From NCBI GenBank assembly GCA_963924565.1, contig OZ004614.1:8804001-8868000 (forward strand): a stretch of DNA of 64,000 nt, in the 5' to 3' direction. The stretch is from Ascidiella aspersa. Lineage: Eukaryota. Shown here piece after piece: positions 21,774-63,560 of the stretch; positions within the stretch are counted from its first letter, which is position 1, and each line of letters begins with the position of its first letter. Both the position numbers and the translations under genes were made by a program. The notes beneath the pieces were generated by a model that was not told the origin of the DNA, made no database searches, and saw only the letters and a list, made by a program, of their open reading frames with translations.

Positions 21774-21945
21774 TCAAATCAAGAGACTCCATGACATTTG
21801 GTTGTCGTATTTGCAGCAGACATCAACAAAAACAAGATGGAGCAAAATTAATACAAAAATGATAAGTATGACGATGTTACGAAGCATTGTGAATTGATTT
21901 GCTTTCACTTTTTATATAATTCTAGTTGTAACACTTCTTTTAATT
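21774..21945 (-). CDS. Candidate terminal exon encoding a transmembrane helix (…MLRNIVILIIFVLILLHLVFVDVCCKYDNQMSWSLLI*), frame-disrupted upstream of the helix
   Basis: TTGTTTTCTAG acceptor at 21946; ~20 hydrophobic residues followed by CC; joining it to repeat 6 needs one extra A in the A5 run near 21909-21913 and read-through of the TAG at 22593. Confidence 0.5.
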
Positions 21946-24900
21946 CTAGAAAACAAATAAAGTTATATTTAGAAAATTAATTTAGTCGAAACAAACACCA
22001 CATGAGCTAAGGCAAAAATGAAATGATTGTTGGTAATTTATTTTTACTATCTGTTGTTTGTCTTGTTTAGTTGAACTTTTAAACGTTGTTTTGTGGTCGT
22101 ATTCAGCCTATTTATTAATCTGTCTCAATAGATTTCAATGGAAAACGCCATGCTGCATGTCTGCAAGTAACAATTTGTAAATGACTTGACTCGACTTAAG
22201 TTTTATGAGGGTAATGACGTAACTTGAGACAAATGATTCGTGTGACTATAAGACCTTCGGAAAAATGGCTTAAAAAGAAATAAGATATTTTTATTAAACA
22301 TTTTTTATAAAATGGACGTATTTATCTTAACATTTACACATAAACAATTTACTTGCATTAAATTTATTTATTATTTTTTAAATGATATATTGCTTATACT
22401 CGGATGATTTGACCAATTTTATTAGTTTAACTTTGTATTCTCATGACAAGGACTTGACTTGGAGATGACTTTGCACAAAATGACTTGGACTAAGACTTGT
22501 TATTTATTTAAAAAGATTTGACTTGAACTTAAGACATTTCAAAATGATTGGTTTACCACACTAAGATTTTAGATCCAATTATTACCCCGTTTCTAAACCA
22601 AAATAATTTCCATCATTTTAGACATTGTGGCCTTGATTTCTTCTTTGGAAATTTCTGCACCATTAGTTCTGCAAAAATAAAGTTTTGATTTACATACCAA
22701 GTATTCAAACATATAACGCACTTTTTTTTACAAAACGCTTGGTATATTTTTAGGTTAGTAGTGAGTGTAATTTGGGTATACAAACAGTGATGAAAATATT
22801 TTTATCAATTTCTTCAATTGCTGCATCGTTTTATTTTGTTTGATTTTATTTGTTAAAGTGGACGATTCTCACTTTGAAAAGAGAGTGTATCCGAAAACAG
22901 CTAGGCCACTTTTGGATTGAACTGACGCTTTGTTTTTCGTAGAATATTTCTTTCGATAATGCGACACAATTAGTTTGGGGCTCGTATCCTGAAAACAAAA
23001 CCAGCGTTTTTCACAGAATGATTAAAATTTAAAAGATTTATATCAACAAAAAATATACCAGCAAGTTAGGAAGTCGGCTTAAATCGTTAGCTACTCCATT
23101 ACCTGGCCTTTTGGCCTGATAATTAATTTAATGACAAATCCCGATTATTAATATTCTGGCGCATCAGGTATCAAAGCCGAATTTGTTGTATCATAAAACA
23201 CAATCAACAGAGACCGAATTTTTGTTTAAAGTGCAATATATTTGAATTAGAATCGGTGTAATTTTTGATAGAAAAGTCAAATGGGTCGTATTAGCGGGAA
23301 ATAAACCTTCTTTAGTACATTTGCTGAATTGCGAAACAACTTTTGTCACATTCCGAAAACATTGGCAGACTTCATAATTTGATTTTTCAGATAGAAAACG
23401 ATCGTTTCGAATATACTTACCCCAGTGAGAGGCAAGTAAAAGTACACCTCGCAAACTGTTGCTACGCCTGCAGAATGTACTTGGACGCCACCATATTGCA
23501 AGATATTGTTGCGTAAAATAAGCAAACCATCAAAAGTACCAAACTTGCCCCTTTCAAAAGCTCCGGCTTTTGAGTCCACCTTTCAAAAACACAGAGCATC
23601 GTTAAAGTTTGGGCAAAATTTAGAAAAAGTTTTTAACCAAAGTCCCTCAATACAAATGTTGGTAAATCACCTTCACCAAATTTAATTACCTCTATAGAGT
23701 ATTGTCCTGGCCCAGCTTCAAAATCAATAACAAAAAATGCGGTGAAAGGATGTACGGTGAAGGTTTCAAAGATGTACGATGCACCTCTAAATATCATTTT
23801 TTGTCAAAAAAAGTTAGGCCATATGTTAAAAAACAGCCTTTCTTATCTGGGGTAAATTTACCCGTAAGGGCCTGAGGCCATTTGTTATTTTTATTTTTTA
23901 ATACATGAGCAGCACTTTATATATTGGGGTAAATGTGATATTTATTTTTAATAAAAGGGTAAAACAAACAAAAAAGGAACTCCTATTTTAAACGGACATC
24001 CAAAAATAAAAATAACATATTTCACGTACGAGTAACTTATGTCGTAAATTGCTTGTTGACGTCTCGCATTTCCCACTTTGAAGTAAACCTTGAAATATAA
24101 TTTTATCGCTGAACATTTAGTTATTGTCAATGGGCAATGAATATATTTTGCAAAAGTATAGATAAATGCCGTGTAGGCATCTGATTTCGTGTTAGTTATC
24201 GAGGACAAAGAAAAATCACACTAACAATATACCCGGTTGCATCTGTTGCATCTGTTGCATATTTAATATATGTAGGCTATTCTGTCCAAGACAGCTCCCA
24301 AATTTAACCGTGCAAATGGGTTGCTAATGCGATTTTAATTATGACAAAAACACTCATCGCAACCGAATCATATCGGTTCGTTTTTTTGTCAAAACTCAGA
24401 CTTAAGCAGAGCCGTAACTTTGTCAGCTGTTTTTGTGTTTGTGTTTGCCACTGATGGTGTCATTCATCAGCAACAGCTGAACGAATACAAGCTTGCCACT
24501 ACATTTGGTGACCCCGGTCCAAGAAACAAAATTTCTTGGCTATAAACGAGTTTATTGTTTAAACATCAAAATTCAAGCACGCCAAGCGCCGTTTCTCTAA
24601 AGCAGGGGTTCCCAACCTGGGGCCATGGCCCCTAGGGGTGCACAAGCCTTTTTCAAGGGGGCCATTAAAAAAATTGAAAGACAGTAATATTTTTAAATTA
24701 TCATCTCTAAGTCTACTAAACTATAACAAAATAAACAAATTACAATTTAATAAAAATATTAGTACAACAATAAGTACTTCTTAATCTTGAGTTTCCAGGA
24801 GTGTATCAGTCCCATTGGGTAGCGTGTATACCTAAATAAATTTCCTTTTTTGTTGGGTAAAAAAACATGCTACCCAATTGGAAGAAAATGTTTTTTTTGG

Positions 24901-27900
24901 TAGTAATTAAGATTTCATACCCAAATATTCATGGAACGTTTCTACCCAAAACAGGAAAATTGGGTAATAATCACAAGTACCCAATTCCAATTTCTCGAAT
25001 TGGGTAATCATAACACCCTAAAAGAATTAGGTATGAGCTTTTATACCCAAAACGCATGTACCCAAAATCGGTGAATTGGGTAAGGTGAACGAATACCTAA
25101 TAAACAAATTGGGTACTCTTAACTTCCTAAAAACAGTGGTTTCAGCTTAGCATAAAACAAGACTCCAAAGCAAATTTTAAAACGTACAGTTTGGTTTATT
25201 CACAAAATCAAGTCAACTTAAATACACAAAAATCGGTGAATTGGGTAAAGTTAACAAATACCTAATTAACAAATTGGGTACTCATGACTTCCTAAAAATT
25301 AAATACAAACAAGCAGACTGTTTTAAGGATTCTAACCTAAATTTTGGACAAACAAAATCCTCAAATGAACCAAATGGGGATACTATACATAAAGGGCGAG
25401 GAAAAAAATAATGGTTACTTCATTCAGTTTGGGTAGTGCATGAGTTTACTCCGAAAAACGGCAAAATAATTTCGGTACCCTAAAAAACAACCCAAGTAAA
25501 ATTACTTAATATAATTTTGATTTTTTCTTGGGTAAAAACACATGCTACCCAATTAAAGAAAAATATATTTTTGGGTTGTAGGATTTCATACCCAAATTCA
25601 GAGCCGAGATTTGTACACAATATAAATAAATTGAGTATAGTCAACATGTACCCAAATAATATCGGTAGAATGTTAGGTAACGAATGTTCACATAATTGGG
25701 TTTGGGAACTTTGGGTATTCTTAGATTTAGCCCAAAACAAACTTGGGTAAAATCCAAAAGTTAAAAAGAAATATGTTTAGCACCGGGTATAAAAATACCA
25801 ATTAATCGATCATACATTTTATTGTTCATCGTAATGATCAACACAAAACTTGTTCGATAGTGGTTAGGTTGGAAATATAAATAGTTATGGCTTAGAGCTT
25901 AGAGCCTAACATACATTAAATACTCCAGTTTGTTATAACGCTTATTAGGTGTACAAATATTTAAATAACGGCAAAGTGGTGCGTCGATTTTAAATTTTGA
26001 AAGTTGGCGCGAGACGTCACACTCCGTTACGCCTTTGTCTCGCCAAGCGCGCGTCTAAAATTTAGTTTGCAAACCACATAAGTTATGTTTATGTGAGAAG
26101 TGTGATAAACATCAGCCAGTTGCAGTTATCGTGTTCTCAACTTTAAAAGATTCGGATAAAAAAGAAAAGTAAGGTGGATATGTCTAGATCAAGCCTTTTA
26201 TCAGATCCTGTTACTTTTGCCAACTTTCTTATTTGCTTTTTAGAAATTGTGGTGAACGCAAAATTATTTTGGTGAATTCTTTTTCTACCCAACAATGTTG
26301 AATTTTTCGAAAAATGTACCATGAATATTATGTATGGCACGAACTAAAATTACCCAATATAGCATTTGGGTAAAATAATGTAATACCCAAAATATTTATT
26401 GGGAATCCCCACGAGCGTACCCAGAAAAGTAAAGTGGGTACAACCTAATGTTACCTAAGAATACCATTTGGTTGGACAATGCGATACCCAAAAATATTTA
26501 TTGGGAATCCCCACGAGCGTACCCAGGAAATTAAATTAGGTACAGGCTTATGTTACCCAATATATAATTTAGGTAAAATAATGTGATACCCAATAATTTA
26601 GATTAGGTAGATATCAGTGGTACCCAAGGTATTTTGGGTATAAATTGCCCAAAAATATTTATTGGGAATCCCCACGAGCATACCCTGTTTGACAAAAAAG
26701 TACCCAATGACTTTTGGTATTGAATAGTTGAATACCCAATTTTGCTAACAGTGTAGAGGACCACAATTTTAGTGACATTAAGCATAGTTGCACTACAGCT
26801 TACCATCCCCAAGCCAACGGTTTCGTCGAACGCTTTCACCGGCATTGAAAAAGCGTTTTAATTCCACGAATGCAGGCAGCAAATTGGACAGACGAATTGC
26901 CCCGGGTTCTACTAGAAATTCGGGCTACGCCAAAAGAAGATATAAAAGCATCCAGCGCGGTGATGGTCTATGGAACAACTATTTCCTGCCTGGGGATTTT
27001 ATTCCCCACGCAACTAACTTCAGAGTTTTTTCAAACACTTCTAAACTCAATTCGTAACATTCTCCCTACGCCAATGTAAAAGCATCGTAATTTTACCGTT
27101 GATGTTCTGTATGCCTTGTTAAATTGTGCATATGTTTTTGTTCGCACAGATGGTTACCGCCCCCCTCTAAATCCTCCTTATGAGGGCCCATATAAAGTTT
27201 ACGAACGAGTAATGTAGCCCCTGCAGCATGTTAACCGAAGCGTGTCTTGTGCCTTTTTACGTACGTTTTGGCAATTGTCTTTTTCGTTCGTTTTTTTGTT
27301 TGCGTGTCGCGCACGTGGCAACTGGTGTCATTCATCAGAACACGCTGATCGAATACAAGCTTGCCACAACAGCACTAATTTTTTAGAACTCAATTATGGA
27401 ACTGAAGATTTTATTATGTGAAGTTTGTTTGTTTTGGTACTAAATTAAAAATATTTGATTTATTTTAGGACACCCTGTATTTTTTTTGCAACTATATCGT
27501 CAAAAAGTAACAATTACAGTTCAGACTATAGGCCTATATTATATAACTCAGTATCAACTTGTATTTCATATATGGAAAAGTGTTTGAAACATGTATCTCA
27601 GGTGGTTAAGACAAAAACACATAATAAACAATAACGAAAAAGCTATACAAAGATGAATGTATCTGTACTATCTCTAAATCAAATATTACCGCGGGTTTAT
27701 TTTTTCTTGGGCTCTGGTCCACAGAATTAACTAGTGGTTGTTATGGCAAGGTACTTAGATAATTAAAAAAAAAAAAAAAAACTATGGAGTCACTACAATA
27801 CTTTACCATAGAACGGTAATAATGCTTAAAAAATACCAAATATTTACTTGATTTTTAAAAGCCCCTCATCAATTCAAAGCAAACCGAAACGCCATCCTAA

Positions 27901-30900
27901 AAAATGCTCTAACCCATTGTTCTAACAATATTTCTTACACACTATATTTTAGTGAGAACACAGCACTTGCCTCATTCCCTCTTGAATACATATACCTTCC
28001 CGCGCTAAACATCGAAGCTTTTGCAAATCCTTTTGGAAACCTGTACTTGTGAAAATTGTTGATTGGCCTTGTAAGACTGAACGACATCTTTAGAAAGCTC
28101 TCGAACAGTTCTAAAACAATGCAACTTTTTGTAGTAACACTTAATGAACCAATGCTACCCAATGAAACGATAGCTATGAAATACACAAAATGACTTGATT
28201 CTGTCATGCTTATTTTATTCTTTAAAAAATTACATGATTAAAGTTACAAATGTCAGTAGTCGTTCACCAACAAAGTGGTTCGATTTACGCAGAATAAACT
28301 AATGCATACCTTTAGCGACGCATTTTAAACCACTAAATGGACGACTTTGAGTTTGATAAGTGCTAGAAGTTTGCAGACAAGGGCCGCTGGTGCAACTTCG
28401 GCTTCTTATTTGGATCCCGTACACGCGACAACTGATAGGGCTGGCCGACCAAGATGTCCAACGACTCCAAACTTAATTTGATATAACATTTTACCAACAA
28501 TCAACAGTTATCTCCAACCAGTTTAATATTCCAACTTCAACAAAATGAAACCTAATTATATAAATAAATTGTATACTGCACATAGGTTTATCCATGATAG
28601 GAATAACATATGTCCTCTTTTTCAAAAAAATGCATGGTCTTTGGAGGACACTAAAAAAAAATGTCATCGTTTTGTAATTTGCGTTTTCTTGTTAGTCTTT
28701 TTAACGAAATAAATTTTCTGTGCGATTTTTCGGCATTATTCATTTTTAAATGAATGTTTGCCATTGACAAATTAATGGAAACATCCAATATTTATGTTGT
28801 GAATTTCCTAAATAATCTGCCTTGTTATCTTGTGTTCCTTTGCTGTCAATTTTTTTAAATATATCCAAACATCATCCAAAAAGATGTTATACATTCCATA
28901 TAAAGTAAAATTCCATTTGCAATGTGTGTACAAAATTGGCCTCTTTTAAGGCGATAATTTATGTGGTAGGCCTAGTTTATAATTATAGATGTGCAGAGTA
29001 TGGATCGTTTATTTTTAATTTCAAGATGTAGCGGATAATTGTGCAAAAAATATGATTTTCAATCTACAGAGTTGTAAACAAGTCATTTCAATTTTTCCAA
29101 GTCTCAGTCAGGTCATTCGTGAAATGCCTTAAGATCAAGTCAGGTCTTTCCAAAAAATAATTAGTCAAATCGGAGTCCAAGTCACCAGTTTCCAAAATAA
29201 AGTCCAAGTCAATTCATTATTATTAGAGCAAGTCAACTCAAAGTCAAATCACCGACATAACAATAAAACAAAAAAACATTAAAATTGGTTCGTCCGATTC
29301 TAAGCAATAATTCAACTAAAAAACACAAAAAAAACGGCATGTATCAATCTAAATTAAATGTAGATTGTATTATTTTTTTATTTTAATTTACGCATTAATG
29401 TAGACGCGCGTCTAAAGTGTACCAGTATTATCTAGCAATGCACCGGTATATAAGTAATTACATAAAAGCACGTATATATAGACTGATTGTGAAACATTGT
29501 ACACAAACATATGTATAGCGTAACACGAGCGACTTTACCTGAGTAATCAGCTCCCACAAGGATATGAATCATGGCAGACATCGTCTCATTGATTTCTTTT
29601 ATGGCTATTTTCTCACCAGAAGGCCTGCGAAGTTGATATATCGTTGGTCGAGCAACCATTATTTCTCAACATAATAGCACTTATTTAGAAACAAACGAGT
29701 AACATAAATGCACCTGCTATGAATATATAACTTTGTTTAAATGGTTAATTGGGTGCTTTCAAGAACAGATAAGCAAGGAGTAACAATGCACTTTGTGTGA
29801 GTTTATTAAAATTTGGTTAAAGAGAAAATTAAATTTTGTTTATCTTTAGCTTGTAGATTATATTTCACGACTACCGTTCTGTTCAATCTCATGAAATAGC
29901 TACCCCTGTTTCTGAACAAAAATCTTTTTTTTAAGAAACTGCGTTTTCCTATTGTGCCTGCTGCGGACGTCGTAGCCTACCACTCTTAACACCCTTACCT
30001 TCTGAGCAGAGCAATTTTTGGCTGAAAAATTATTTACAGGGACTGTTGTCAACAAAACGCTTGGAACCGTTAAATTTTAGTCACATTTGGGAAGCATACT
30101 TCGAAAGAAGAGTATATCCGAACACGGCCTTGCCGCCTCCCGATCGGACAAAAGCAAGATTTTCTGTTTTCCTTCCATGTTTACGTTTCCAATGATACGA
30201 AGGGACATCGCGCTCTTTTGGCCAAAGGACGAGACTGCGGTTGGAATTCTGAAGCGGAACATAAAGTGTTCCCAAATGCCTTGCCTGTCAGGTGTTATTG
30301 CTATCCAGAAAATAACCGCAATGTACTCGATTTTACCCTGAAAGGTGCACTTTAAAAAAAAGTTGGTTCGCGACTGGAGGAAACTGAAACAACTTATGAA
30401 AAAGCAAATTGTGACAAAAAAAACTGGAAGAAATCTTATGTCATTTTTAACTATATCGCTTATGTGATTTTAGTAATAAAGTTATTCGGTATGGGATAAG
30501 ATCGCGATACATTTTCTCCAACTTGCCGAGTAGAAAAAAAATAATTAATCAGACATCCCTAGTTGGGCCCAGCTACCACTTACTGGAGTGAGCGGCAGGA
30601 AAAAGTAAACTTCGCAAGCCGTTGGATCCTTTTTGGAGGACAGTTGCGTGCCTCGATACTTGAGAGTGTAGTTTTGAAGGAAAACCGAGCCTTCGAACGT
30701 CTCAAACAAGCCACGGACGTGTGTGTTGAATTCGGAGACCACCTGTAAATTTGACAAAGTCATCCAGACGAAATAGGTAAACGCTAAGACTACGTTGACT
30801 AAATGATGAAATGCCATCGAAAAACGTGTTTTGCACACCTCTATTGAGTACTGTTGAGGACCCGATTTTTCATTTAGAAGAAAGACTGCTGTAAACGGAT

Positions 30901-42900: not shown

Positions 42901-45900
42901 TGCTATAACGTAAGGTTACCTGTGTGTGATTGAGCAAAAAAACTGTTATAATTTATAAACGAAATTTAGCATATGTAGTCGCACATGTAGCCTGTTACTT
43001 ACCGATGTTAGGGGAAGGTAAAAGTAAACCTCACAAACGCTGGAGACATGCAGCCCCATGTAAATTTGAACGCCTTCGTATTTAAGAGTATAATTTCGCA
43101 AAGAAACCGAACCATTGAAAGTCCGAAGAATCCCTTTGCCGCGAATTAACAGCGTGGAATCAACCTATTTCCAAAAAGCAATTTTTTTGTTTTAAATTCG
43201 GGCAATTAAATATCGTAAGACAAATAAGACAAACTATGTTAGAAATCACAGATACACTGACCTCAATCGAGTAACTTTCTGGGCCTGAATTGGCGTCAAG
43301 AAAATACATCGCTGTCATGGGGTGCATTGCGACAATGGCAAAGATATACGACGGACCCCTGAAAGTAATGAAGACGAGATTCACCGGATTATTAAGGTCT
43401 TGTGTTGCAGTTTGTCAATCTTAGGCTACTCAATATTAAAAAAAATATATTAAAGATAAATGACTTAAAAAGTTTACACAAGGTTCTGTGTTACAGTTTA
43501 TCAATCGCATTCAATGTTAAAAAACTAATTAACGATAAATGACTAAAAAAAGCCCGTTTACGTGGCCATTCCAAGGGCAGTCGATAACCTATTACAGAGT
43601 TTTGTGTCATAATCCTACTACATCAAACAGGGTAAAACAAAAAAAACACCACAAGGTAATAAAAACTGCCCCGAAAAGCTCGCATAAGTGTAGATTCTTA
43701 TTGTGTCATTTGTGCGCGTTGGCTTTTCATCATCAAATCATTTTATTTAAGTGTCTGTTAACATATGTGTAAAACAATTCAAGTCATTTTCTCGCTATTT
43801 GAAACACCTCAACCGGGTGTTTCTTAAGTGTGGATAAAAAATTATCGAAAACGTGTAATTGTGATGTAAGCACAAGTTTGTGATGTTCGATAGATAATAG
43901 TTCACGTTGACAAGACACCTCAATTACTGAGTGTTAACTTACGTGTAGGTTTTGTTGTATGCTGCACTCACACGGGAAGTGTTTCCAACTTTATAATAGA
44001 TCTGAAAGAAATCATAACTTGTTTTATGTGTTATTCATACGTCGTAATTTTTATAGAAAAACAGTTATTAGCAAGTATTTTACGTGTACTACTTTGAAAC
44101 AAGCATAACAGCTGAATACAAGTTTGACCCAAAACAAGTTATTATTTTATTACTGAAATATAAAAGTTTGACCCAAAACTGACAAAACTTGTATAAAAAA
44201 TATATATATAATACAAACAACACTTAACTTCATTGTGTTTCGGAGCTTGTTTTAAAGCAGTTTATTTAAAGGTTTCTTTCTCGTGCAAATTATCTGTTCT
44301 GCTTTAGAGAAAAAAAAAAATTCTAGTGACCCCAACTTTAACCATTCTTTTAAGGTAAAAAGATTACACGTGCTAAACGCTCTCACTTGATTTCCACCAG
44401 GAAAACTATATACATCGGGAGGATCTGCTATCGGGTAGGAATAAAAGTTGTCGACCTTCCTTGTAAGATTGCTAATGTTAGACCGAATACGCTGGAAGAT
44501 TTCTGAAAACATATACATAAAAATAGCCTCGTCAATAGCATTTAATAACTAGAGCCACAGCAAAATTCTGTAGATTAATAAAGAAAAATATTTCGCCCAG
44601 TTATTTGAAACATTTTTACCAAAATACAACCAATATTGTGCTTTTCGGTGTAGCGTGTTTTTCTTGTCATTTTGTCAACTGCGAATTCTAACTTTAATTA
44701 TTAATTTGCGCCTTACTTTAAAATAGGGTCTATAGGGACTTGGGTTCATATTTCGAAATGTATTAAACTGTAACATTGATTCTTATTTTGGTTGGTATGT
44801 GTTTTTAAGAGTAATCTGTTTGTGCACACGGCCCTTTTAAGCCAGCTTAACATTCTCTGCACACGGGACATTTAATGGTGTTTTTCTCGTGAAGCTATCT
44901 TTCTAATCTGACCTCTGGCGATTTTCCACTGGACTTTTAAATTTAATGACTGCCAATCTCGCAAATAATGGTCACCTTGTTCTGATCTAATCTGTTCGCT
45001 GGCGCCAGCCGTCCTCGGACAGTTAATTTGTTTTTCTGCATCGCGTGCCATCGTTATTTTTACTAACTTTATTAAATCGCGTACTTTCCAATAACTGGGT
45101 TTTATTCCGTCGACGCCCTTGTCGGCATTTTCAGTTCTTACGTAACTGCTGTTTAGAAGGTGTCTATATTAATCGGCGTCTGAACGTCTCTTTTGTCCAG
45201 TATTTGGGAAGTGGGCCATTGCGTTTAGAGGTCAGCACGTTTTGTGTAGTGTTCTGTCTTGTAAGTAATCTTTGCTCACGTATTATAAGCGTTGGTGTGG
45301 TGTTTGACATTTTGGCTCATCTAATACATTTAAGTTGCTTGGGTTAAGTTGTGTGGTCTGTAGAATAAACTTAAGCATTGAGGCAAATTAACTCCCCATT
45401 ATCTTTTTAAGAACTCATTGCGGTTGCGTCCTGTCGGACAAGTATAGGTTAGGCGGTAGATTCTAATATACTAGGGCGCGGCAGGGCGTAACATTCGGAA
45501 ACTCAAATGTCTATTTAAAGAAATACCTTTATATTGTAGCGTTTAGCGAATCTGTGGCAATCGAAACTTAAATGTGGCAATTGGACCCTTAATGTGGCAA
45601 TTGGAACTTGAAGTCTCTTACACGAGGTAAGGCTGGTCGTCGTATACATCTGGCTCTTAAAAAATCGGGTTTTGGATTCCGTACAGAAACGACTTAGTGA
45701 GATCTACGCAACGTCACTTTACTTATTTAATTCTCACTTTAATGCAATTACAATTACAACCCTATCCGAAATACTCAGAATACAACAGCATAAACGATAT
45801 TTTTCAACGACTCCGGTCAACAAAGCATACATTATGTTGTATTTTTGTATTGTTCGCTCGAAGAGTAGAATTGAAAAAGGCGTAAGAATAAAAGGGCACA

Positions 45901-48900: not shown

Positions 48901-51900
48901 CAAGGAAGTTAAAAAAAGAATTGAAACGTCATTCGTAACCGATTAATCTTAAAAAGTCAACCCTGGCTTAACTTTGTGGACGCCCTAGAACAGGGGTCGG
49001 CAACCTACGGCCCGCGGGCCGGATGAGGCCCGCCGATGAAATCCATTCGGCCCGCCGTCTCCTAGACAAACCAGACACGAGTCTATTTGACATACTTTTT
49101 GATTAATTTAACTATGTAATTGCGAAAAATGTTCGCGCTTCGCGCGAATGTTCATTATATGTTTGGTTTGTATACGCATGGAAGCTACCTTTTTAACTAG
49201 GTCAGCGATTCTTTACCGTTGCGCCGTAAAAGGCTGCCAAGTGCGTCGCAAACAAACGGAAAACGTATTCAAAATTATTGGACATATATTTTTTAACATT
49301 TTTTTATTTTCGGCAATGTAACAAAACTTGCAAAAACATTAAAAGAAATATCTGTATGCCCCCCAAAAAAAAATCGCGCTCGCTTCGCTCACCTGGTGCG
49401 CCTTGACTTAAAACGGTTAACAAACACTGAGCTAGATTAACTTTAAATGTTATCGCGTTCCCTCAAAGTAGTTTTATTACACTCTTCATTAGTAGCACGG
49501 ATGACGACGTGTGAACTTGAATTTTTAACCAAACGAACGCTTTTTTTTCGCGCTTTGCGTCAACAATTTACTGCCACTGTAAATGTGATTAAACGTTTTT
49601 AAGTGCAAAAAATGTCCAAGGCCCGCCTGATTGACAGTTGCTCTAACATTTTAATACCACAATTCTTAATTAACATTTGTGCGGCCCGCGGAGACCTTTC
49701 TAAGTTTGGTTTTGGCCCGCGACTAGAAAAAGGCTGCCGACCCCTGCTCTAGAATATGTCGACATATAAATTACACTGTATAGAAGTAAAACTAAACAAA
49801 AAATCGACATGCAACCACTGAAATATCTCATGTGTGAGTAAAAGATTGGTTAAACTACGATCATCACTGGGAGATAACTTTCTTACGACTCGCAACACTC
49901 AATGCGTAACATACCGCTTCGATCGCCATCCAATATGATATGCATCATCGTCATCATTGTTGCGTTGATTTCTTTTTGCGAAATTGTTTCACCAGTTGGT
50001 CTGCAAAAGAAAGTAGAAATTATAAATAGAAAAATTTAGAAAAGCTAATAGCTCTATTTAGGTTATTTTAATTTTGCAAACGAATACTTTCGCATTTCCA
50101 CCTGACTTAGACACTTTTTTGACCAAACGAGTTTTACGTGAGCTTAGAAACTATAATTTTAGTATTTTGCGAGATTTATTAAATGCTATCTTACTTTGAC
50201 AAGAGTATGTAACCAAGAACAGCTTGACCACCACCAGACTTCACCGTAGCCCTGTTTCTCGAATAATCTTTATAACGAGGACGACGTCCAGTATCGTGGT
50301 ATGACGTCGACACAACAAAAGTACGGTTCGAGTTCTGTTGAAAATATCAAAAGATTTATTTTTTCTTGAATGAAACCTTCAACAATTAAACAATTATATC
50401 AAAAGGTGTGGTTCCAGATGGTATTTGAGTTCCCTCTGCATTCGTTAGGTACAAATTTGGACAGACGTTTCGCCGCAGTAATAATTAAAGTATTATTAAA
50501 ATAATCTTTTGTGTAGCTTAATAAATGCGAAAAAAATGTTGAATAAAATGTACATGGAATAACGAGTCTTTTTTTCTATGTTTTACACTTGCAATTAATT
50601 AATGTATTTGCTATTTTCAACAACCGTCAAAGTAAGTTATCCGAGTTGTCACATATACCTACCGGAAAAAGTGGTAGAAAAAAGTAAACTTCGCAAAACG
50701 TTGGTTCTTGGGGCGCGAAATCCTGCACGCCTCCATATTGCATTGTATAGTTTCGCGTTGAAACCAAGCCCGCAAAAGTCTCAAATTTGACTTCTTCGAC
50801 GCTAATGTAAGTAGGGAAACTCTGCACCTGGTCACAAAATTGCGTTTAAGTGGACTATTTCAGTGATGGCATGCGTAATCTAATTTCGTAAAATAATCAT
50901 GAAGCAATGTTTCATAATAGTATAAACACTGACCTTTATTTCGTACTTTTCCGGACCAGATTTTTCACCGAGAAGAAAGAGTGCTGTGAATGGTGTGACA
51001 CCATACGATGTAAATGTGAATAAAGGTTCCCTGAAATGAACTGGATTAAACGATGCTTTTCATAATCTACTACAGCCAATTAAAAAATGTTATATATGCG
51101 GTTTTATACAACGTCCTAACCAGATAATATGGAACGAACCATTTCCAAGCCAAGCGATAAGTGGTTATGTCCAATACAGGTATTACAGGTACGGCAAGTG
51201 ACATAATTAAGATAAGTGATAAGAAATGAAAGTCAGTTTGTATTTACGCTTACAGAGAGATATATTTGGCAACAAATAAAAGAAAGATTAGCGAAATACA
51301 TTTCTCGTTCAATCTTACAAAATCCCTGACTTTGATTACGTCAGGCAATATAAAGAATATAAGCTACTTCAGGGTCGCACAAATATTGACCAGTGGCTAT
51401 AAAAAATGTTGCAGATCATTTTGATGTAAAGGCCGGGTTCCGATATATTAACCAAACTTGGGGCATCCTTTAAAAGCGTCCTACTAATCTGGTGAAAGTA
51501 TAAATAAATAGAACAAGCTTATAGAGTCAATGGAATCCGACCGCTTTTTAAACGACTGAATAAACTCACTATAATTGCTATATTAGAAATAGGCAAGATT
51601 GGCACAGTTTAACTATCCTCCATGATTCTTCCGAACTTGCCACGCTCATGGGATAATTAATTTGTGGCAGATGCGCCAACCGAAATACTGACGTTCCCTT
51701 TGAACTCACGTGTAAGTTTTGTTGTAAATTGCACGTTTTGGTCCTTTCTTTCCTTCGAAAGATACCTGAAAAAACGCGTTCGATGGGTTAATGAAACACT
51801 TTCTTTAGCGTTAGTTCGGGCAGCTCTTGTTAACCTAATCCTATAGGGGTATAATTACGAGTTACGACTAATGGGGTTTAATTTACCAAAGGAGTAAGTA

Positions 51901-54507
51901 ATCCATTATGTGAAAATGTTTGTTTTTAACCGCAGTTCAAATTTCAAAAAGTATATGGTAAACAGCTTTTCAGTTTTAATTTATTTAATGTTTATTCAAA
52001 TACAACATAATTTAAAGATAAAAAATAGAAGTTTGACAATGGAGTAATATGGCTATATGTTAAGGCTGTTAAGCAAAATGTAGTATCCAACCTATGGGAT
52101 TGTTTAACATTTTTGGGTAAGGAATACAAATTAGTAGGCCATTCTAGTGTTGTTCAATCACTGAAAAGAGTATTTCAAAAAAAAAATTGTTTGAGGTAAC
52201 GATATAAAGAAAGTTAAGAACCAATAACATAGATCAGATGTGTTGAAATGGTTTCTGTCCGCAACAGTCAAACCTGACAACATGATGATCCGCTAAACGC
52301 AATAGCAAATATATTGGACATGGTATTTTCAGTGTGCTTTATTATAGTACCGTACAACATATTAATAACCTTGTAACAGTTAAAAGTGAAGTATGCAAGA
52401 TTGTTTCAGTGAGAAAAATATTTATAATGAGTTGGTTTAGATCTACTCACAACAGCATTGAATCTGAAATAATGCAAAAAGTTTTTTTTGAGACTAAATT
52501 GGACGATGCGCACAAGAAGTTGACAAATGGCAGATCGAGATCCGCCATTTGAACACCACAGACATAAATAATCAAAATTTTGTTTAAAATTCAATCTTAT
52601 GGTTTACTATTAGATAGCCGAAATAAATAAGCGTCTGGGATTTGTGCTCACATGGTTTCCATCTCTTCGCCCGCCCTTGCTTATTTGGTAAACTCCCGGG
52701 GATGAGGGTAACTTGTAGAAGAAAAAGTTTTCCACGTTCCCTGTCAGATTAGCAGAGTTGCTTCGAAGGCGCTCGACGACATCTGTTGAAATATATGTTA
52801 TACATTTTGTTTGTAATTAAATTGGAGTTTTGAACCGATTAAGCCAGGGGCCCGAGGATCCGTTGAGGGTACGTGGACTAGTTTAAGGCGTCCACGTAGG
52901 CCTAACTGAAATATTAGTGTATTATTTTAAAAACGAATGATTTAAAGTTTTTTTTGAAGAAAATATATTAACTAAAACAAAACTCTTGGAACCTTCTCCT
53001 TAAATGTTATTACACTACATTTCAATTGCAAAAAATTTGGAACGCAAACGGCAGTTTTGCCATGTTTACTACTACTAGAAAATCCTGCCGACCATGTTCT
53101 ACGCAAACCAAAATAAAATTTTAGTAGTCCCCGTTACAAAAGTTTAAGCACCACTGCCACCGAAGTAATTGATCACAGTATAGTCAAAGCAGATGCTACT
53201 AAACCCCATTGTATTGTGTGTATAATTTTAGTCTTAATTGCACAAATTGTTCACACATTTAACCCGTAAATATCGCGATGGGTTATTCAAACTTTTGAAC
53301 GGTTTCGCGCGGGTAACCATTTCATATTTGCAGAAACATGTTACCAAGCAAAATAAAAAATAAAACTGTTTAACAAAAAAACGCAACTATAACATTCTCG
53401 TTTTGTTTTATGATAACAAAATGAGGTTTTAAACCTAAATTTGGAATACTGATAATACAAAGAAGTGAATGATGCCAGTTACGAACAAACACATGTGAGT
53501 ATAAATTTTAATTCGGCTGTAACGTGGGACAATTAGTGATTGCTTTTAACAGTTTCAACTTCAGACCCTGGTGTTTTTTTTTTTATTTGTATAAGATTTA
53601 TTTGGATTAAAAAATGACAAATTCACGTTTTGAAAGGTTAGTTTATCCTGGGCGTCTTTTTTAGGAATTCAAAGGCATAAAGGTATTATGTGTGGTCACA
53701 CGATATGTATTAGGGTGTGGAAGTACAGAAAGTATGTTTATCTATATTTGGGAGGAAGGTAAAATAATTGTCCACCACTTCATTCAAACATAAAATAATT
53801 ATAACAAAATTTGTTTATATAAAAACTCACGAGGCCATAATGTATAAATTGTTTATAGCGTAACTTGGCCTCATGTTCACCTTACAGTTCAGAAAAGGTT
53901 TTATGAACGTTATACTCACCATTCGCGAATGTTGCAGTGGTCTCTGACGCAAATGCTAGAAACGAAAAATAAAGATCAAACAATTTAATATGTGATAACG
54001 CTATTGAACAGACATTATGAAAAATGTTTAGTCAACGATGCAATGTATTCTTCGTAGAGGTGTTTTTCTTATTAAGACAAACCGCGAATATGTTTACATG
54101 TGTTTTATGGCGACGCGTAAAGATGTCTATTATTAGCCTGTTAGCCGCTGTAGGCGTTTTCCTAGTGGCAATCATGACAGAAACAATTATTTTTTCTGCA
54201 TAATTGCCACGCATGAAGAAATCAAATTGACAATTAAGAAAAGATGACTTGAAATACAAAACTATGGTATAAGCTGCATTTCTCAATTGGTGCGCCAGAA
54301 GGTTGTATTCTGCGCCCAAGCCCGTCGAAAAAATATTCGAAATATATTTATATTTATTCCTTTCTATTTCGGCTTACTTTGCTGAGTGCGCAGTAACAAA
54401 ACGATAAAGCCTATAATACAATAAAAACGAGCATGAAATTTACGATAACTACCGGTATACTGCGTAAAAGGTGCGCACTGCGCAAAAAAGTTCAAAACAA
54501 TTGTCAT
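21774..54507 (-). CDS. Large multi-exon gene: signal peptide + 6 x unnamed ~225-aa domain + 3 x TSP1 + probable TM segment (D1-D2-TSP1-D3-TSP1-D4-D5-TSP1-D6-TM); ~1540 aa to the stop in repeat 6; this copy has frame lesions (possible pseudogene/null allele or sequence errors)
   Basis: Six recurring sets of homologous exons A-F with GT-AG sites (one GC-AG), conserved lengths (B mostly 59 nt, C 97 nt, F 86 nt) and conserved phases 1-0-2-0-0-2-1. Recurrent motifs: GPSYxFxTFAxHPFTA, LRNYTLxYxGxQ...CEVYFxLPLT, NKASVxSGxGxAVFGYTLLSK, EIxxTMxxMMHIILG. The frame joins across all junctions except at the noted lesions. Confidence 0.88.
22593..28110 (-). CDS. Domain repeat 6 (exons 27971-28110, 24030-24088, 23690-23786, 23421-23579, 22873-22988, 22593-22668), ending in TAG
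   Basis: ELFESFLKMSFSLTRPINNFHKY...GNE (GC donor); VYFKVGNARRQQAIYDISYS; GASYIFETFTVHPFTAFF; LRNNILQYGGVQ...CEVYFYLPLTG; NKASVQSKSGLAVFGYTLFSK; EEIKATMSKMMEIILV*. Confidence 0.85.
24270..27371 (+). mobile_element. Old degenerate Gypsy LTR element remnant with nested insertions
   Basis: Shared LTR ends ...GAATACAAGCTTGCCACTACA (24503) and ...GAATACAAGCTTGCCACAACA (27371); PBS-like TGGTGACCCCG after the 5' LTR; integrase remnant at 26780-27200 (YHPQANGFVERFHR, WTDELPRVLL, PPYEGPYKV). The 5' start is approximate. Confidence 0.75.
24808..26753. repeat. Repeat-rich non-autonomous DNA element (CMC/EnSpm-like right end CAGTG) with many TACCCAA/TTGGGTA motifs
   Basis: Many TACCCAA motifs in both orientations; internal ~40-bp repeat x3 (26383, 26484, 26648) and ~70-bp repeat x2 (25062, 25227); ends ...TTGCTAACAGTG|TA; left end not recognisable. 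Confidence 0.55.
28310..28471 (-). CDS. Thrombospondin type-1 repeat exon (TSP1-c)
   Basis: 162-nt phase 1-1 exon: VWSRWTSWSASPISCRVYGIQIRSRSCTSGPCLQTSSTYQTQSRPFSGLKC. Confidence 0.85.
29539..32385 (-). CDS. Domain repeat 5 (exons 32231-32385, 31526-31584, 30839-30935, 30584-30742, 30100-30248, 29539-29624)
   Basis: EILERVRSNSCNLTRGVANYYPF...GNQ; LYFKIGDEPRQLVVYNKTYR; GPSYTFATFAVHPFTAVFLL; LQNYTLKYRGTQ...DPTACEVYFFLPLTP; FVRSGGGKAVFGYTLLSK; KEINETMSAMIHILVGADYS. Confidence 0.88.
30996..31298 (+). mobile_element. hAT MITE in an intron of repeat 5
   Basis: CAGGGTTTCTTAA...TTAAGGAACCCCTG; empty site visible in the inverted duplicate near 57445. Confidence 0.85.
31905..32151 (+). mobile_element. 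hAT MITE in an intron of repeat 5
   Basis: CAGTGCTTCTTAA...TTAAGAAAAACTG; perfect TSD ATCTAAAA; empty site in the duplicate near 56822. Confidence 0.88.
32909..36960 (-). CDS. Domain repeat 4 (exons 36821-36960, 36031-36089, 35821-35917, 35596-35748, 33253-33371, 32909-32994)
   Basis: EIFERFLSERGILTWLVENFHRY...; VSFKVGEAPFKTAIYNRKYT; GPSYTFTTFATHPFRA...; LNYTMKYGGAQ...CKILFFLPLTT; NASVWSGDGASVLGYTLLSK; DEIKTAMRTMMHIILGGDKA. Confidence 0.88.
33480..34793 (+). mobile_element. TA-flanked TIR element (probably pogo/Tc1-mariner derived), non-autonomous, with a nested MITE fragment
   Basis: TIRs GGGGAAGTGCTGGATCCATGGAACA / TGTTCCATGGGTCCCGCACCTCCCC flanked by TA; short start MPTFKTRSSNKGLFTE resembles pogo-type transposase N-termini. 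Confidence 0.7.
35203..35360. repeat. Imperfect palindrome / foldback MITE-like hairpin
   Basis: ATCTAAGACTGTT...TTACAGAA...TTTCGCC pairs with GGCGAAA...TTCTGTAA...AACAGTCTTAGAT. Confidence 0.6.
37362..37520 (-). CDS. Thrombospondin type-1 repeat exon (TSP1-b)
   Basis: 159-nt phase 1-1 exon: VWSHWSQWSSCPDNCPGQQTQIRLRNCIIGPCPQNNSRVERETRPC; WSxWSxWSSC motif. Confidence 0.9.
37984..41223 (-). CDS. Domain repeat 3 (exons 41096-41223, 40348-40406, 39734-39830, 39214-39372, 38399-38517, 37984-38069)
   Basis: GIFKRVRANSPDISRNVKRFYAY...; VYFKVGQEPLRRATYDSSYS; GQSYFLETFAIHPFTA...; LRNYTLQF...CEIYYLLPLTS; NKASVQSGGGPAVLGYTLLSK; DEIRDTMMSMMHLILGIDQQ; frame continuous. Confidence 0.88.
39895..40237 (+). 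mobile_element. hAT-type MITE (CAGGGCTGCGGAGTCG family); partial copies near 11050 and 33985
   Basis: Perfect 16-bp TIRs; TSD GCTTAAGT/GCGTAAGT. Confidence 0.88.
41810..41968 (-). CDS. Thrombospondin type-1 repeat exon (TSP1-a)
   Basis: 159-nt phase 1-1 exon: VASTWTTWSADGSSCRQKGTQSRTRNCTSGHCLKTSNIVEVQKRPC; WxxW and RxRxC signature. Confidence 0.85.
42245..44502 (-). CDS. Domain repeat 2 (exons 44387-44502, 43943-44002, 43262-43358, 43003-43164, 42677-42795, 42245-42330); exon B has a +1 frameshift
   Basis: EIFQRIRSNISNLTRKVDNFYSY...; GPSYIFAIVAMHPMTA...; LRNYTLKYEGVQ...CEVYFYLPLTS; NKASVESGKGEAVFGYTLLSK; EEIKASMLTMLHLILGVDQS. Exon B is 60 nt versus 59 nt in four paralogous exons. Confidence 0.85.
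45835..48697 (-). mobile_element. Ty3/Gypsy LTR retrotransposon (Mag/K02A2.6-like), internally deleted and non-autonomous, in the intron between repeats 1 and 2
   Basis: LTRs at 45835-46047 and 48467-48697 with TGTTGT...ACA/ATA ends; 5-bp TSD CATTA; polypurine tract AAGGGGAGA next to the 3' LTR. Confidence 0.95.
46077..48375 (-). pseudogene. Gypsy gag/pol remnants (gag N-terminus, RT C-terminus, RNase H, integrase) with frameshifts
   Basis: LWDDYWSRF (gag); LEKCKF..VEYLGH (RT); CDAS, YSQIQKEALA, TDHKPL (RNase H); HxxH..CxxC, WSRLHID, IVSDN (integrase). Protease and the RT YxDD core are missing. Confidence 0.92.
48991..49746 (+). mobile_element. hAT (Charlie-type) MITE
   Basis: CAGGGGTCGGCAACC...GGCTGCCGACCCCTG; TSD CCCTAGAA/CTCTAGAA. 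Confidence 0.88.
49915..52782 (-). CDS. Domain repeat 1 (exons 52652-52782, 51710-51765, 50934-51030, 50663-50827, 50195-50334, 49915-50000)
   Basis: DVVERLRSNSANLTGNVENFFFY...GNH|VSFEGKKGPKRAIYNKTYT|EPLFTFTSYGVTPFTALFLL...|...CEVYFFLPLFP|NSNRT...AVLGYILLSK|PTGETISQKEINATMMTMMHIILDGDRS; canonical splice sites, frame continuous. Confidence 0.88.
53920..54507 (-). CDS. Putative first two coding exons (54378-54507 and 53920-53955): MTIVLNFFAQCAPFTQYTGSYRKFHARFYCIIGFIVLLLRTQQ/TFASETTATFAN, signal-peptide-like
   Basis: ATG at 54507; 130-nt exon ending at GTAAGC (phase 1); 36-nt phase 1-1 exon (TTTCTAG...GTGAGT) that joins in frame to exon A1; hydrophobic core FYCIIGFIVLLL. Confidence 0.6.
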
Positions 54508-63340: not shown

Positions 63341-63417
63341 AAGTTCATTCAAAATATATATAAATAAATATATTTATTTTTAATTTTTTTAGGCACTTAA
63401 AAACAAAAAAACTAGAC

Positions 63418-63560
63418 AGGGTGTGCGGTTTTTGTATATTTTTCCATGGGGTTTAGCGCGGTTCTACTATATTATATCAGGGGGTATGGTGCGGTTCTAC
63501 TATATTATACCAGGGGGGTATAGCGCAGTTCCACTATACTTTACCAGGGTGTTATTCTAT
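63418..63560 (+). repeat. Short ~30-bp tandem repeat (GGGGTATAGYGCGGTTCTACTATATT-like), 4-5 copies
   Basis: Visible tandem units; single related units at ~9533 and ~63110. Confidence 0.7.

What the first reader, a model, noticed from the sequence alone, without database searches (positions are those of the whole stretch)
21774..54507. Hidden ~42-exon gene built from six copies of an unnamed ~225-aa extracellular domain interleaved with TSP1 modules
Seen: six sets of six exons with the same intron phases, near-identical lengths and recurring motifs (HPFTA; LRNYTLxYxGxQ; CEVYFxLPLT; SVxSGxGxAVxGYTLLSK; EIxxTMxxMMHIILG), a hydrophobic leader and a candidate TM exon. Each repeat starts and ends in phase 1, as do the TSP1 exons, which is the established signature of class 1-1 shuffled extracellular modules. 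Inference: a large cell-surface or secreted glycoprotein (recurring N-x-S/T sequons, one invariant Cys per repeat) whose repeat is a mobile domain I cannot match to a named family. From memory, it looks like a diverged form of an uncharacterised domain in marine invertebrate proteins with a DGGxDMxDxGN...DPSICEVYF pattern; I have not verified this. Adhesion, immune recognition or matrix roles are speculation.
Basis: partly seen in the sequence, partly recalled or inferred. Interest (0 to 1): 0.9.

Follow-up and report, generated by a model that had tools for sequence, protein, structure and literature searches.

The report
Tunicate gene of six bacterial-like repeats
This is a real, transcribed sea-squirt gene for a large secreted protein built from six copies of an unnamed 215-residue module plus three thrombospondin repeats; the module also occurs in many bacterial surface proteins and is predicted to fold like the sugar-binding sandwich domains of glycoside hydrolases.

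Summary
The exon pattern is real. On the minus strand, six sets of six exons (E, F, A, B, C, D) share identical intron phases (1|0|2|0|0|2|1). Three phase 1-1 TSP1 exons follow repeats 2, 3 and 5. The open frame is unbroken: 40 coding exons and about 1,506 aa.

RNA-seq confirms four predicted junctions exactly, and also the R1-to-R2 join across a retroelement-bearing intron. The reads cannot tell this copy from its near-identical paralogues.

A signal-peptide exon conserved in diverged paralogues lies at 56163-56235. The gene ends at a TAG inside the last repeat exon. The proposed TM exon is not supported.

The repeat belongs to a family with no Pfam or NCBIfam model. Its members are in ascidians (Ciona LOC104266555, Phallusia, Clavelina, Styela). 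Homologues also occur in many bacterial secreted proteins (hhalign 99.5%, E 5e-23). An AlphaFold model of a canonical member (pLDDT 86.6) resembles galactose-mutarotase-like beta-supersandwich domains (Z up to 9.3).

The window's repeats have lost the family's conserved acidic loops (DGGxDMYDxGN, GADGxG). The gene sits in a cluster of 92-99% identical paralogues under purifying selection.

The most likely product is a secreted matrix or tunic glycoprotein. Acquisition of the module from bacteria is an open possibility.

The parts
56163..56235 (-). Probable first coding exon: signal peptide MYRKDTVFVEILLLICVFATGTSK, with a phase-1 donor AAG|GTATAT
Evidence: The ORF and donor were found. ORF, hydrophobic core and donor are conserved in diverged paralogues at 81-86% DNA identity, with several synonymous changes. 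No RNA reads were laid here.
49915..52782 (-). Repeat 1. Exons: E 52652-52782, F 51710-51765, A 50934-51030, B 50663-50827, C 50195-50334, D 49915-50000
   Evidence: RNA reads whose loose ends at 44503 read ...MHIILDGDRS show that exon D joins repeat 2 exon E.
42245..44502 (-). Repeat 2. Exons: E 44387-44502, F 43943-44001, A 43262-43358, B 43003-43164, C 42677-42795, D 42245-42330
   Evidence: RNA junctions 43358|43943 and 42795|43003 are exact. The E/F junction was laid at 44408|44001, also in frame, instead of 44387.
41810..41968 (-). TSP1-like exon T2, phase 1-1
   Evidence: RNA junctions 41968|42245 and 41223|41810 are exact.
37984..41223 (-). Repeat 3. Exons: E 41096-41223, F 40348-40406, A 39734-39830, B 39214-39372, C 38399-38517, D 37984-38069
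   Evidence: Strand-specific RNA depth lies over exons E, F, A and B.
37362..37520 (-). TSP1-like exon T3 (WSHWSQWSSC...), the best preserved of the three
   Evidence: Pfam TSP_1 scores 19.1 bits against a cut-off of 21.6. The three-exon profile hits only TSR-containing chains in the PDB, best E 2e-4.
32909..36960 (-). Repeat 4. Exons: E 36821-36960, F 36031-36089, A 35821-35917, B 35596-35748, C 33253-33371, D 32909-32994
29539..32385 (-). Repeat 5. Exons: E 32231-32385, F 31526-31584, A 30839-30935, B 30584-30742, C 30100-30248, D 29539-29624. The A/B intron is 96 nt, stop-free and in frame.
   Evidence: Paralogue comparison of all six exons shows no stops or frameshifts, and pN/pS is 0.07-0.08.
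28310..28471 (-). TSP1-like exon T5, phase 1-1
22596..28110 (-). Repeat 6. Exons: E 27971-28110 (GC donor), F 24030-24088, A 23690-23786, B 23421-23579, C 22873-22988, D 22596-22668
22593..22595 (-). TAG stop codon directly after ...MMEIILV, inside the last repeat's D exon
   Evidence: The two plus-strand paralogues have a stop at the same place. Three sister copies and the diverged cluster lack one base and read on for a few codons. Family members P0012 and P0009 also end right after the last repeat's C-terminal helix.
22503..22508 (-). First AATAAA downstream of the stop, about 85 nt away. Candidate poly(A) signal.
   Evidence: Sequence only; not tested with reads.

Best explanation
The locus is an intact, transcribed ascidian gene on the minus strand, about 22.5-56.2 kb, with 40 coding exons and about 1,506 aa.

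The encoded protein has a signal peptide, six tandem modules of about 215 aa, and three degenerate thrombospondin type-1 repeats after modules 2, 3 and 5. It ends right after the last module, with no membrane anchor.

Each module is a set of six exons bounded by phase-1 introns. The array therefore grew by duplication of whole exon sets, and the TSP1 exons, also phase 1-1, could be inserted without breaking the frame.

The module belongs to an unnamed family shared by ascidians and many bacterial secreted proteins. By inference from a model of a canonical member, it folds as an N-terminal helix, a beta-supersandwich of about 11 strands, and a C-terminal helix. This resembles the carbohydrate-binding accessory domains of glycoside hydrolases and galactose mutarotases.

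Most likely role (inferred, not shown): a secreted, N-glycosylated extracellular matrix, tunic or mucus protein. Its beta-sandwich modules would act as multivalent binding or spacer units, and its TSRs would tether it to matrix or cell surfaces.

The window's modules have lost the family's conserved Asp/Gly loops, so they probably no longer bind the ancestral ligand or metal. They may serve a structural role or have a new specificity.
For: Anatomy:
- Six by six exons with identical phases and an unbroken frame.

Expression:
- Strand-specific RNA-seq depth lies on the exons. Junctions 41223|41810, 41968|42245, 42795|43003 and 43358|43943 are exact, and R1-D joins R2-E.

Constraint:
- Paralogue exons differ by 2.1-3.2% and introns by 3.7-5.5%. 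There are no stops, and pN/pS is 0.07-0.08 for sister copies.

Secretion:
- The signal-peptide exon is conserved.
- The stop lies in the last module exon.
- There are 23 sequons.
- Relatives carry the module alongside Sushi, CUB, WSC, VWD/C8/TIL, trypsin and collagen.

Family:
- A profile of exons A and B finds only 17 proteins among 1.84 billion. The true hits are ascidian.
- An HMM of the six repeats matches them over the full length.
- hhalign of the eukaryote set against the bacterial set gives 99.5% probability, E 4.7e-23, over 192 columns. The window's repeats alone against the bacterial set give 93%, E 3e-7.

Fold:
- The AF2 model has pLDDT 86.6 and pTM 0.88.
- 48 of the top 50 VIA-align matches are beta-supersandwich domains of carbohydrate-active enzymes, mutarotases or YidC. 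Z is 9.3-6.4 over 133-202 aligned residues.
- Foldseek's weak best hits fall mostly in the same class.
Against: - No direct evidence exists for any ligand, tissue or localisation.
- The fold was predicted for a canonical metagenomic family member (L001:94-801), not for the window's own repeat. The window's repeat has no contiguous reference and was not folded.
- Z scores of 8-9 are only modestly above the background typical for models without a clear match, and sequence identity is 3-10%.
- Of 20 columns conserved in both bacteria and canonical ascidian members, the window keeps only 7 in at least 4 of its 6 repeats. All four conserved Asp are gone in nearly every repeat, which weakens a carbohydrate-binding reading for this gene.
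- 125 of the 146 RNA reads laid are 95-99% identical. Paralogue exons differ by only 2-3%, so the reads may come from paralogues or another allele.
- The 5' and 3' ends were not covered by reads.
Confidence: 0.55

Rival explanations
1. It is an innate-immune recognition or opsonin-type protein, one of an expanded family of secreted pattern-recognition molecules. The sandwich modules would bind microbial glycans and the TSRs would act as in properdin.
For: - The family is expanded in this lineage: at least 139 exon matches, at least six near-identical gene copies at C8 8.52-9.00 Mb, plus arrays at C8 10.0-10.2 Mb and on C2, C6, C3 and C1.
- Relatives combine the module with collagen plus part of a fibrinogen domain (ficolin-like), Sushi, CUB and trypsin.
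- The TSR profile also hits properdin.
Against: - Sister paralogues are under strong purifying selection, not diversifying selection (pN/pS 0.07-0.08).
- The conserved putative binding loops are lost in this gene.
- No expression data from haemocytes or after challenge are available.
Confidence: 0.22
2. It is a type I membrane receptor or adhesion protein. The last module would splice to the hydrophobic ORF at 21777-21911.
For: - A hydrophobic ORF (IVILIIFVLILLHLVFV) lies about 0.7 kb downstream.
- Three sister paralogues and the diverged cluster lack the TAG and reach a GT donor (GGG|GTAATA, GAG|GTAACT).
Against: - In the window the TAG precedes that donor.
- From the one strong upstream acceptor, all three frames hit stops in the paralogue (read from the alignment).
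- Paralogue indels in the ORF are not multiples of three, and its C-terminal part changes frame.
- Its DNA identity (72-82%) is no higher than that of the surrounding non-coding DNA.
- AT-rich DNA gives such ORFs by chance.
Confidence: 0.08
3. This particular copy is a silent or decaying duplicate. The RNA reads would come from its 92-99% identical paralogues, and the extra G that creates the TAG would be a first disabling lesion or an assembly error.
For: - Most reads are 95-99% identical.
- There is a one-base difference at the stop relative to three sister copies.
- An LTR retroelement sits in one intron.
Against: - All 39 downstream exons are open with intact splice sites.
- 21 reads are at least 99% identical.
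- The lesion removes at most about 14 codons after the last module. The two plus-strand paralogues stop at the same place.
- pN/pS is low.
Confidence: 0.1

Closest known systems
Ciona intestinalis LOC104266555 (XP_078491493.1), Phallusia mammillata CAB3263223.1, Clavelina lepadiformis LOC143469517 and paralogues, Styela clava LOC120332903, Ciona LOC100185757. All are annotated 'uncharacterized'.
   Same: They carry the same module of about 215 aa, matched over its full length, in tandem arrays of 1-8 copies in secreted proteins. In the tree the window's repeats are sister to the Phallusia repeats (99% SH-aLRT).
   Different: The window's repeats lack DGGxDMYDxGN and GADGxG, which the canonical copy on contig C2 of the same genome keeps. 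TSP1 exons are interleaved only in the C8 clusters, not in the C2 gene. Pfam finds no TSP_1 in the Ciona or Phallusia proteins.
An unnamed domain of about 195 aa in bacterial secreted multidomain proteins: Pirellulales and other Planctomycetes, Bacteroidota T9SS cargo, S8/M4/M14 peptidases, dockerin or TSP3-bearing proteins (for example P0034, P0064, P0062).
   Same: Homology runs over the full length (hhalign 99.5%, E 4.7e-23). The motifs I.DGG.DMYDGGN, GN.GADG.G, DPSI and YxLL are shared, as is the C-terminal helix. This domain also has no Pfam or NCBIfam model.
   Different: The bacterial domain is intronless and lacks the CEVYF cysteine. Bacterial and eukaryote sequences separate cleanly in the tree (99%), so no donor lineage is identified.
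Galactose mutarotase-like / glycoside hydrolase-type carbohydrate-binding beta-supersandwich: N-domains of GH116, GH65, GH94, GH63 and GH15; C-domains of PL8 lyases; aldose 1-epimerases; YidC P1.
   Same: The predicted topology and size are alike: Z 9.3-6.4, 133-202 residues aligned, rmsd 3.3-5.4 Å, and this fold class fills nearly all of the top 50.
   Different: There is no detectable sequence relationship. The module stands alone and is tandemly repeated rather than attached to a catalytic domain. It has flanking helices. No catalytic residues can be claimed.
TSR-containing extracellular proteins (thrombospondin-1, properdin, UNC5, TRAP/MIC2, spondins).
   Same: The WSxWSxW motif is present, the exons are phase 1-1, and profile hits go only to TSR chains.
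   Different: The TSRs are degenerate, with 4-5 Cys and no CSxTCG. Each scores below Pfam's gathering cut-off on its own.
Tunicate genes of proposed bacterial origin (CesA, GH6-1 and the eight groups of Tamura et al. 2026, PMC13390645).
   Same: In the searches possible here the family was found only in bacteria and tunicates. The genes are chromosomal, contain introns and are expressed.
   Different: This family is not in that paper's list. Their screen used 13 bacterial proteomes and E below 1e-25, which would miss it. Transfer is not demonstrated here.

Membership tests
Unnamed 'DGG-DMYD-GN / CEVYF' module family (ascidians and bacteria) | Full-length profile match across about 200 columns | tested here: met
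   An HMM of the window's six repeats matches Phallusia, Ciona and Clavelina repeats at hmm 1-217, with iE down to about 3e-48. hhalign of the window's repeats against the bacterial set gives 93%, E 3e-7, over 189 columns.
Unnamed 'DGG-DMYD-GN / CEVYF' module family (ascidians and bacteria) | I-x-DGG-x-DMYD-x-GN loop | tested here: not met
   The regex finds 0 matches in the window and one in each of six loci sampled from the C2 gene of the same genome. Only the final GN survives; the Asp columns 31, 35 and 38 are replaced in nearly every repeat.
Unnamed 'DGG-DMYD-GN / CEVYF' module family (ascidians and bacteria) | G-A-D-G-x-G hairpin loop | tested here: not met
   0 matches in the window. 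Column 102 Asp is absent in all six repeats.
Unnamed 'DGG-DMYD-GN / CEVYF' module family (ascidians and bacteria) | DPS-I-CEVYF strand (eukaryote branch), G-Y-x-L-L-S strand and C-terminal E-I helix | tested here: met
   CE[VI][YF][FY] is present in 5 of 6 repeats (CKILF in repeat 4). GYxL[LF]S and EI..(T/A)M are present in 6 of 6. The DP of DPS is kept only in repeats 1 and 5.
Thrombospondin type 1 repeat (Pfam PF00090) | Pfam gathering score | tested here: not met
   T3 scores 19.1 bits and T5 15.0 bits against a cut-off of 21.6. T2 has only a faint TSP1_CFP_C hit.
Thrombospondin type 1 repeat (Pfam PF00090) | W-x-x-W-x-x-W layer and conserved Cys/Arg pattern; relatives by profile | tested here: met
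   WSHWSQW in T3, WSRWTSW in T5, and W..W only in T2. Invariant C14, R22, R24, C26 and C31. The profile of the three exons hits only TSR chains: TRAP, TSP-1, UNC5D, properdin and MIC2, with best E 2.2e-4.
Thrombospondin type 1 repeat (Pfam PF00090) | Six cysteines and a CSxTCG turn | tested here: not met
   There are 4-5 Cys per exon and no CSxTCG.
Galactose mutarotase-like beta-supersandwich (fold level) | Structural superposition on solved members | tested here: inconclusive
   The test used a model of a canonical family member, not the window's repeat. Z is 9.3-6.4, and supersandwich domains fill nearly all of the top 50. Foldseek's best E is 2e-3 with TM 0.26-0.35. Z is near the tool's stated background of 7-8.
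Galactose mutarotase-like beta-supersandwich (fold level) | Carbohydrate binding or epimerase activity | not testable with these tools
   Needs glycan arrays or enzymology.
Class 1-1 shuffled extracellular module | Module bounded by phase-1 introns on both sides | tested here: met
   All six repeat units and all three TSP1 exons start and end in phase 1. RNA junctions confirm three such boundaries.

The most novel reading that the evidence does not exclude
An extracellular beta-supersandwich binding module of bacteria was acquired once by the tunicate stem lineage. There it gained introns and became a class 1-1 exon set. It was then combined with animal modules (Sushi, CUB, WSC, VWD, collagen, TSP1) and expanded into large gene clusters. 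The window gene would be a derived branch that dismantled the ancestral Asp/Gly binding loops and took up TSP1 exons. This would be a further bacterial contribution to tunicate extracellular biology, beside cellulose synthase.
Probability: 0.35. Interest if true: 0.75.

Novelty: new variant of a known kind. Interest (0 to 1): 0.6.

Why it matters
The work gives a gene model and partial RNA support for a member of a sizeable protein family that has no Pfam or NCBIfam model. It proposes a fold for the family, shows that it has bacterial homologues, and finds animal members only in tunicates.

Tunicates are the one animal group known to have built a defining trait, the cellulose tunic, from a bacterial gene. 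A second bacterial-type extracellular module with a carbohydrate-binding-like fold, expanded into clusters in an ascidian genome, makes a testable question. Did horizontally acquired binding modules help build the tunicate extracellular matrix, mucus or immune repertoire?

The contrast within one genome sets up a natural experiment on what the conserved site does. The C2 copy keeps the conserved loops; the C8 copies have lost them yet remain under purifying selection.

Tried and rejected
- Pfam on single exons gave only weak TSP1 hits and retroelement domains.
- Pfam and NCBIfam on ascidian and bacterial family members found nothing over the module.
- PDB sequence searches with the family profile and with two bacterial members found nothing.
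- ESM Atlas gave no usable hit, twice.
- The search for homologous proteins with P0012 returned only itself.
- Literature searches for the locus names, accessions and motif strings found no papers.
- In the first profile search, the weak bacterial hits P0007, P0008, P0010, P0013 and P0014 were not matched by the full-length repeat HMM. I rejected them as chance beta-sandwich matches.
- I considered a VWA-like reading of FLLD...SGGG...HIILGxD from memory and dropped it. The model is all-beta with flanking helices.
- My first guess at paralogue coordinates for the 3' end missed. I redid it with a DNA search.
- The joined (spliced) protein was never sent to any database, fold or signal-peptide tool. 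Database and fold searches used exon-by-exon references (alignments A1, A2, A3).
- Exons were joined only inside local scripts from the window file, for alignment, a local HMM, counts, hhalign and the tree.
- The window's own repeat was therefore not folded, and SignalP/TMHMM-type predictions were not run.

Full report
**Observation**

The window has no N runs.

All-against-all BLAST of stop-free segments recovers exon classes that each recur six times in the same order. I call them E, F, A, B, C and D.

I mapped every AG and GT/GC onto the class alignments. For each class this gives exactly one acceptor column and one donor column shared by all six copies. The sixth copy of exon F (repeat 1) was found by nucleotide similarity.

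The result is 36 exons with phases 1|0|2|0|0|2|1. Exon lengths are near-identical: A is 97 nt in all six repeats, D is 86 nt in five, and F is 59 nt in five. All splice sites are AG/GT apart from one GC donor, and there are no in-frame stops.

The repeats are 212-234 aa and 37-49% identical to each other. Each has one invariant Cys, in CEVYF.

Three further exons of 159-162 nt, also phase 1-1, follow repeats 2, 3 and 5. Individually they fall just below Pfam's TSP_1 cut-off. A profile of the three hits only TSR-containing chains in the PDB: TRAP, thrombospondin-1, UNC5D, properdin and MIC2, with a best E of 2e-4.

**Expression**

One RNA-seq run of the same species label was laid on 38550-44549.

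- Depth is strand-specific and sits on the predicted exons.
- Junctions 41223|41810, 41968|42245, 42795|43003 and 43358|43943 match the model to the base.
- Twelve reads with loose ends at 44503 carry the end of repeat 1's exon D (MHIILDGDRS). So R1-D is spliced to R2-E across the 5.4-kb intron that holds an LTR retroelement.
- The R2 E/F junction was laid at 44408 rather than my 44387. Both keep the frame, and the discrepancy is unexplained.

Caveat: 125 of the 146 laid reads are 95-99% identical, and paralogue exons differ by only 2-3%. The reads therefore show that this gene or its near-identical copies are expressed and spliced this way.

**Gene ends**

An ORF at 56163-56235 (MYRKDTVFVEILLLICVFATGTSK, donor AAG|GTATAT, phase 1) has the shape of a signal peptide. 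It lies in a block that stays 81-86% identical in the diverged paralogues, whereas the 54.3-55.1 kb block is only 73% identical. Its ORF, hydrophobic core and donor survive there with several synonymous changes. With this exon the model is 40 coding exons, 4,518 nt and 1,506 aa, with 23 sequons.

*3' end.* Repeat 6's exon D runs into TAG (22593-22595) directly after MMEIILV, and AATAAA follows about 85 nt later.

- Three sister paralogues and the diverged cluster lack one base here and read on a few codons to a GT.
- The two plus-strand paralogues stop where the window does.
- The 'TM' ORF at 21777-21911 is no better conserved than its surroundings, and it shifts frame among paralogues.
- Family members P0012 and P0009 also end right after the last module's helix.

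I conclude the protein is secreted. Without reads at this end, that remains an inference.

**The module family**

A profile of exons A and B, built by reference as alignment A1, found 17 proteins among 1.84 billion representatives. The real hits are:

- Ascidian proteins annotated as uncharacterized: Phallusia (8 modules), Ciona LOC104266555 (7 modules) and several Clavelina paralogues.
- A few intronless metagenome proteins.

A local HMM of the six window repeats matches all of these over the full length. Further searches added Styela clava and a second Ciona gene.

Partner domains in the relatives are Sushi, CUB, WSC, VWD-C8-TIL with trypsin, and collagen with part of a fibrinogen domain.

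The family consensus is I.DGG.DMYD.GN ... HPF.A ... GADG.G ... DPSICEVYF ... GYTLLS ... EI.

No Pfam or NCBIfam model covers the module. No paper in the library mentions these loci or motifs.

**Bacterial homologues**

One bacterial hit, P0034, has two copies of INDGGNDMYDGGN ... GNVGADGSG ... DPSV. Searching with it found 164 proteins, of which 120 were listed. Those that carry a name are bacterial secreted proteins: Pirellulales, Bacteroidota T9SS cargo, peptidases, and dockerin or TSP3-bearing proteins.

99 of the 120 listed match the eukaryote HMM, many over the full length. I aligned the two sets independently and compared them by hhalign. The result is 99.5% probability, E 4.7e-23, over 192 columns. 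The window's six repeats alone give 93%, E 3e-7.

In a tree of 100 modules, the 49 eukaryote and 51 bacterial sequences fall on opposite sides of one branch (99% SH-aLRT). The window's six repeats form a clade (100%) that is sister to the Phallusia repeats (99%). The tree was built with the quick method, the bacterial sample was chosen by similarity to one protein, and the root is unknown. It therefore shows a single eukaryote group but no donor.

A 2026 survey of horizontally transferred genes in Ciona does not list this family. Its thresholds would have missed it.

**Fold**

I folded a canonical module (L001:94-801). The alignment held metagenomic modules, two small proteins and the window's exons as fragments, and was partly misaligned.

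The model has pLDDT 86.6 and pTM 0.88. It shows an N-terminal helix, about 11 strands, and a C-terminal helix.

The full VIA-align scan lists almost only beta-supersandwich domains in its top 50. They include GH116, GH65, GH94, GH63 and GH15 N-domains, PL8 C-domains, mutarotases and YidC P1. Z is 9.3-6.4 over 133-202 aligned residues at 3-12% identity. Foldseek is weak but points mostly the same way.

This is a resemblance at fold level, close to the tool's background Z. It is not evidence of shared function. Laying the family motifs against the model's secondary-structure string by hand places the three conserved motifs in loops between strands. That placement is my reading, not a tool result.

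**What is special about the window's gene**

Twenty columns are conserved in both bacteria and canonical ascidian modules. The window keeps only 7 of them in at least four of its six repeats, and all four conserved Asp are gone in nearly every repeat. The presumed orthologue of LOC104266555 on contig C2 of the same genome keeps both motifs.

The window lies at C8:8.804-8.868 Mb. There are near-identical genes at 8.52-8.59, 8.70-8.735 and 8.93-9.00 Mb, more diverged arrays at C8 10.02-10.21 Mb, and further members on C2, C6, C3 and C1.

Sister copies are 92-99% identical. Their repeat-5 exons are under purifying selection, with pN/pS of 0.07-0.08 for sister copies and 0.54-0.62 for the plus-strand copies.

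The TSP1 exon type occurs in both C8 clusters but not in the C2 gene. A TSP1-exon array at C8:5.44-5.46 Mb is a possible source.

**Interpretation**

Shown:
- The exon anatomy.
- The family relationship with ascidian proteins.
- The bacterial homology.
- Purifying selection on the paralogues.

Shown for this gene or its near-identical copies:
- The splicing.

Inferred:
- Secretion.
- The supersandwich fold of the window's own repeats.
- Any binding role.

I favour a secreted matrix, tunic or mucus glycoprotein whose modules are scaffold or altered-specificity binding units. An immune-recognition role is the main rival. Horizontal origin of the module is the most novel reading that the evidence does not exclude.

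**Limits**

- The joined protein was not submitted to any search, fold or signal-peptide tool. Exons were joined only in local scripts.
- Only 6 kb were laid with reads.
- The species is not identified beyond 'ascidian'.
- The retroelement was only described.

Noticed in passing
window 45800-48720: An LTR-retrotransposon remnant lies inside the R1-D to R2-E intron. It has LTR-like direct repeats at about 45807-46092 and 48447-48712. Minus-strand ORFs carry RT/RNase H and integrase domains. GC is 0.42-0.45 against about 0.35 around it. RNA reads show it is spliced out with the intron. Described only.
   Followed up: partly
window 56800-59400 (+ strand): An inverted partial duplicate of the repeat 5 region (29.8-31.9 kb). 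The exon B copy is 95% identical at protein level. The exon C copy is 82% identical over the 51 aligned residues and changed at GYTLLSK. The same fragment accompanies each of the four minus-strand paralogues.
   Followed up: partly
window 39900-40350: A very high-copy repeat in the R3 F-to-A intron. DNA contig depth reaches about 49,000 against about 200 nearby. Reads come from both strands, with many loose ends.
   Followed up: no
window 22165-22562: A dispersed repeat directly downstream of the stop codon. The copies listed (dozens) are 69-75% identical and lie on most large contigs. It would lie in or just after the 3' UTR.
   Followed up: no
window 22599 (minus-strand TTTTGGTTTAG): A one-base difference among paralogues decides the C-terminus. 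The window and the two plus-strand copies stop after IIL(V/I). Three sister copies and the 10-Mb cluster read on to a GT donor or a stop a few codons later. It could be a real variant or a homopolymer error in the assembly.
   Followed up: partly
window 44387-44408: RNA reads place the R2 E/F joint at 44408|44001 (non-canonical ends, 'between: not known') rather than at the GTGAGA donor at 44387. Both keep the frame, and the difference is 7 codons.
   Followed up: partly
G000:C8:5437900-5460700: An array of more than 25 TSP1-type exons on the same chromosome is the next-best match to the window's TSP1 exon profile. It is a possible source of the shuffled TSP1 exons.
   Followed up: no
P0032 (Styela clava LOC120332903) and P0033 (Ciona LOC100185757): These have a ficolin-like layout in which a collagen stretch and only the first 45-60 residues of a fibrinogen C domain are followed by one copy of the module.
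   Followed up: no
window 5700-9800 and 59700-63700; also 13000-13800, 20500-21200 and 49100-49750: Two further repeat families were seen in the self-comparison. One is a segment of about 3-4 kb present near both ends of the window (60-100% identical in translation). The other is a shorter element with three copies, one of them in the R1-D to R2-E intron.
   Followed up: no
L002 (JGI metagenome contig, 4986 nt): An intronless contig encodes Sushi-WSC plus three modules on one strand, and a near-identical partial copy (P0015) on the other. It looks like a palindromic assembly of a transcript from an unidentified eukaryote.
   Followed up: no
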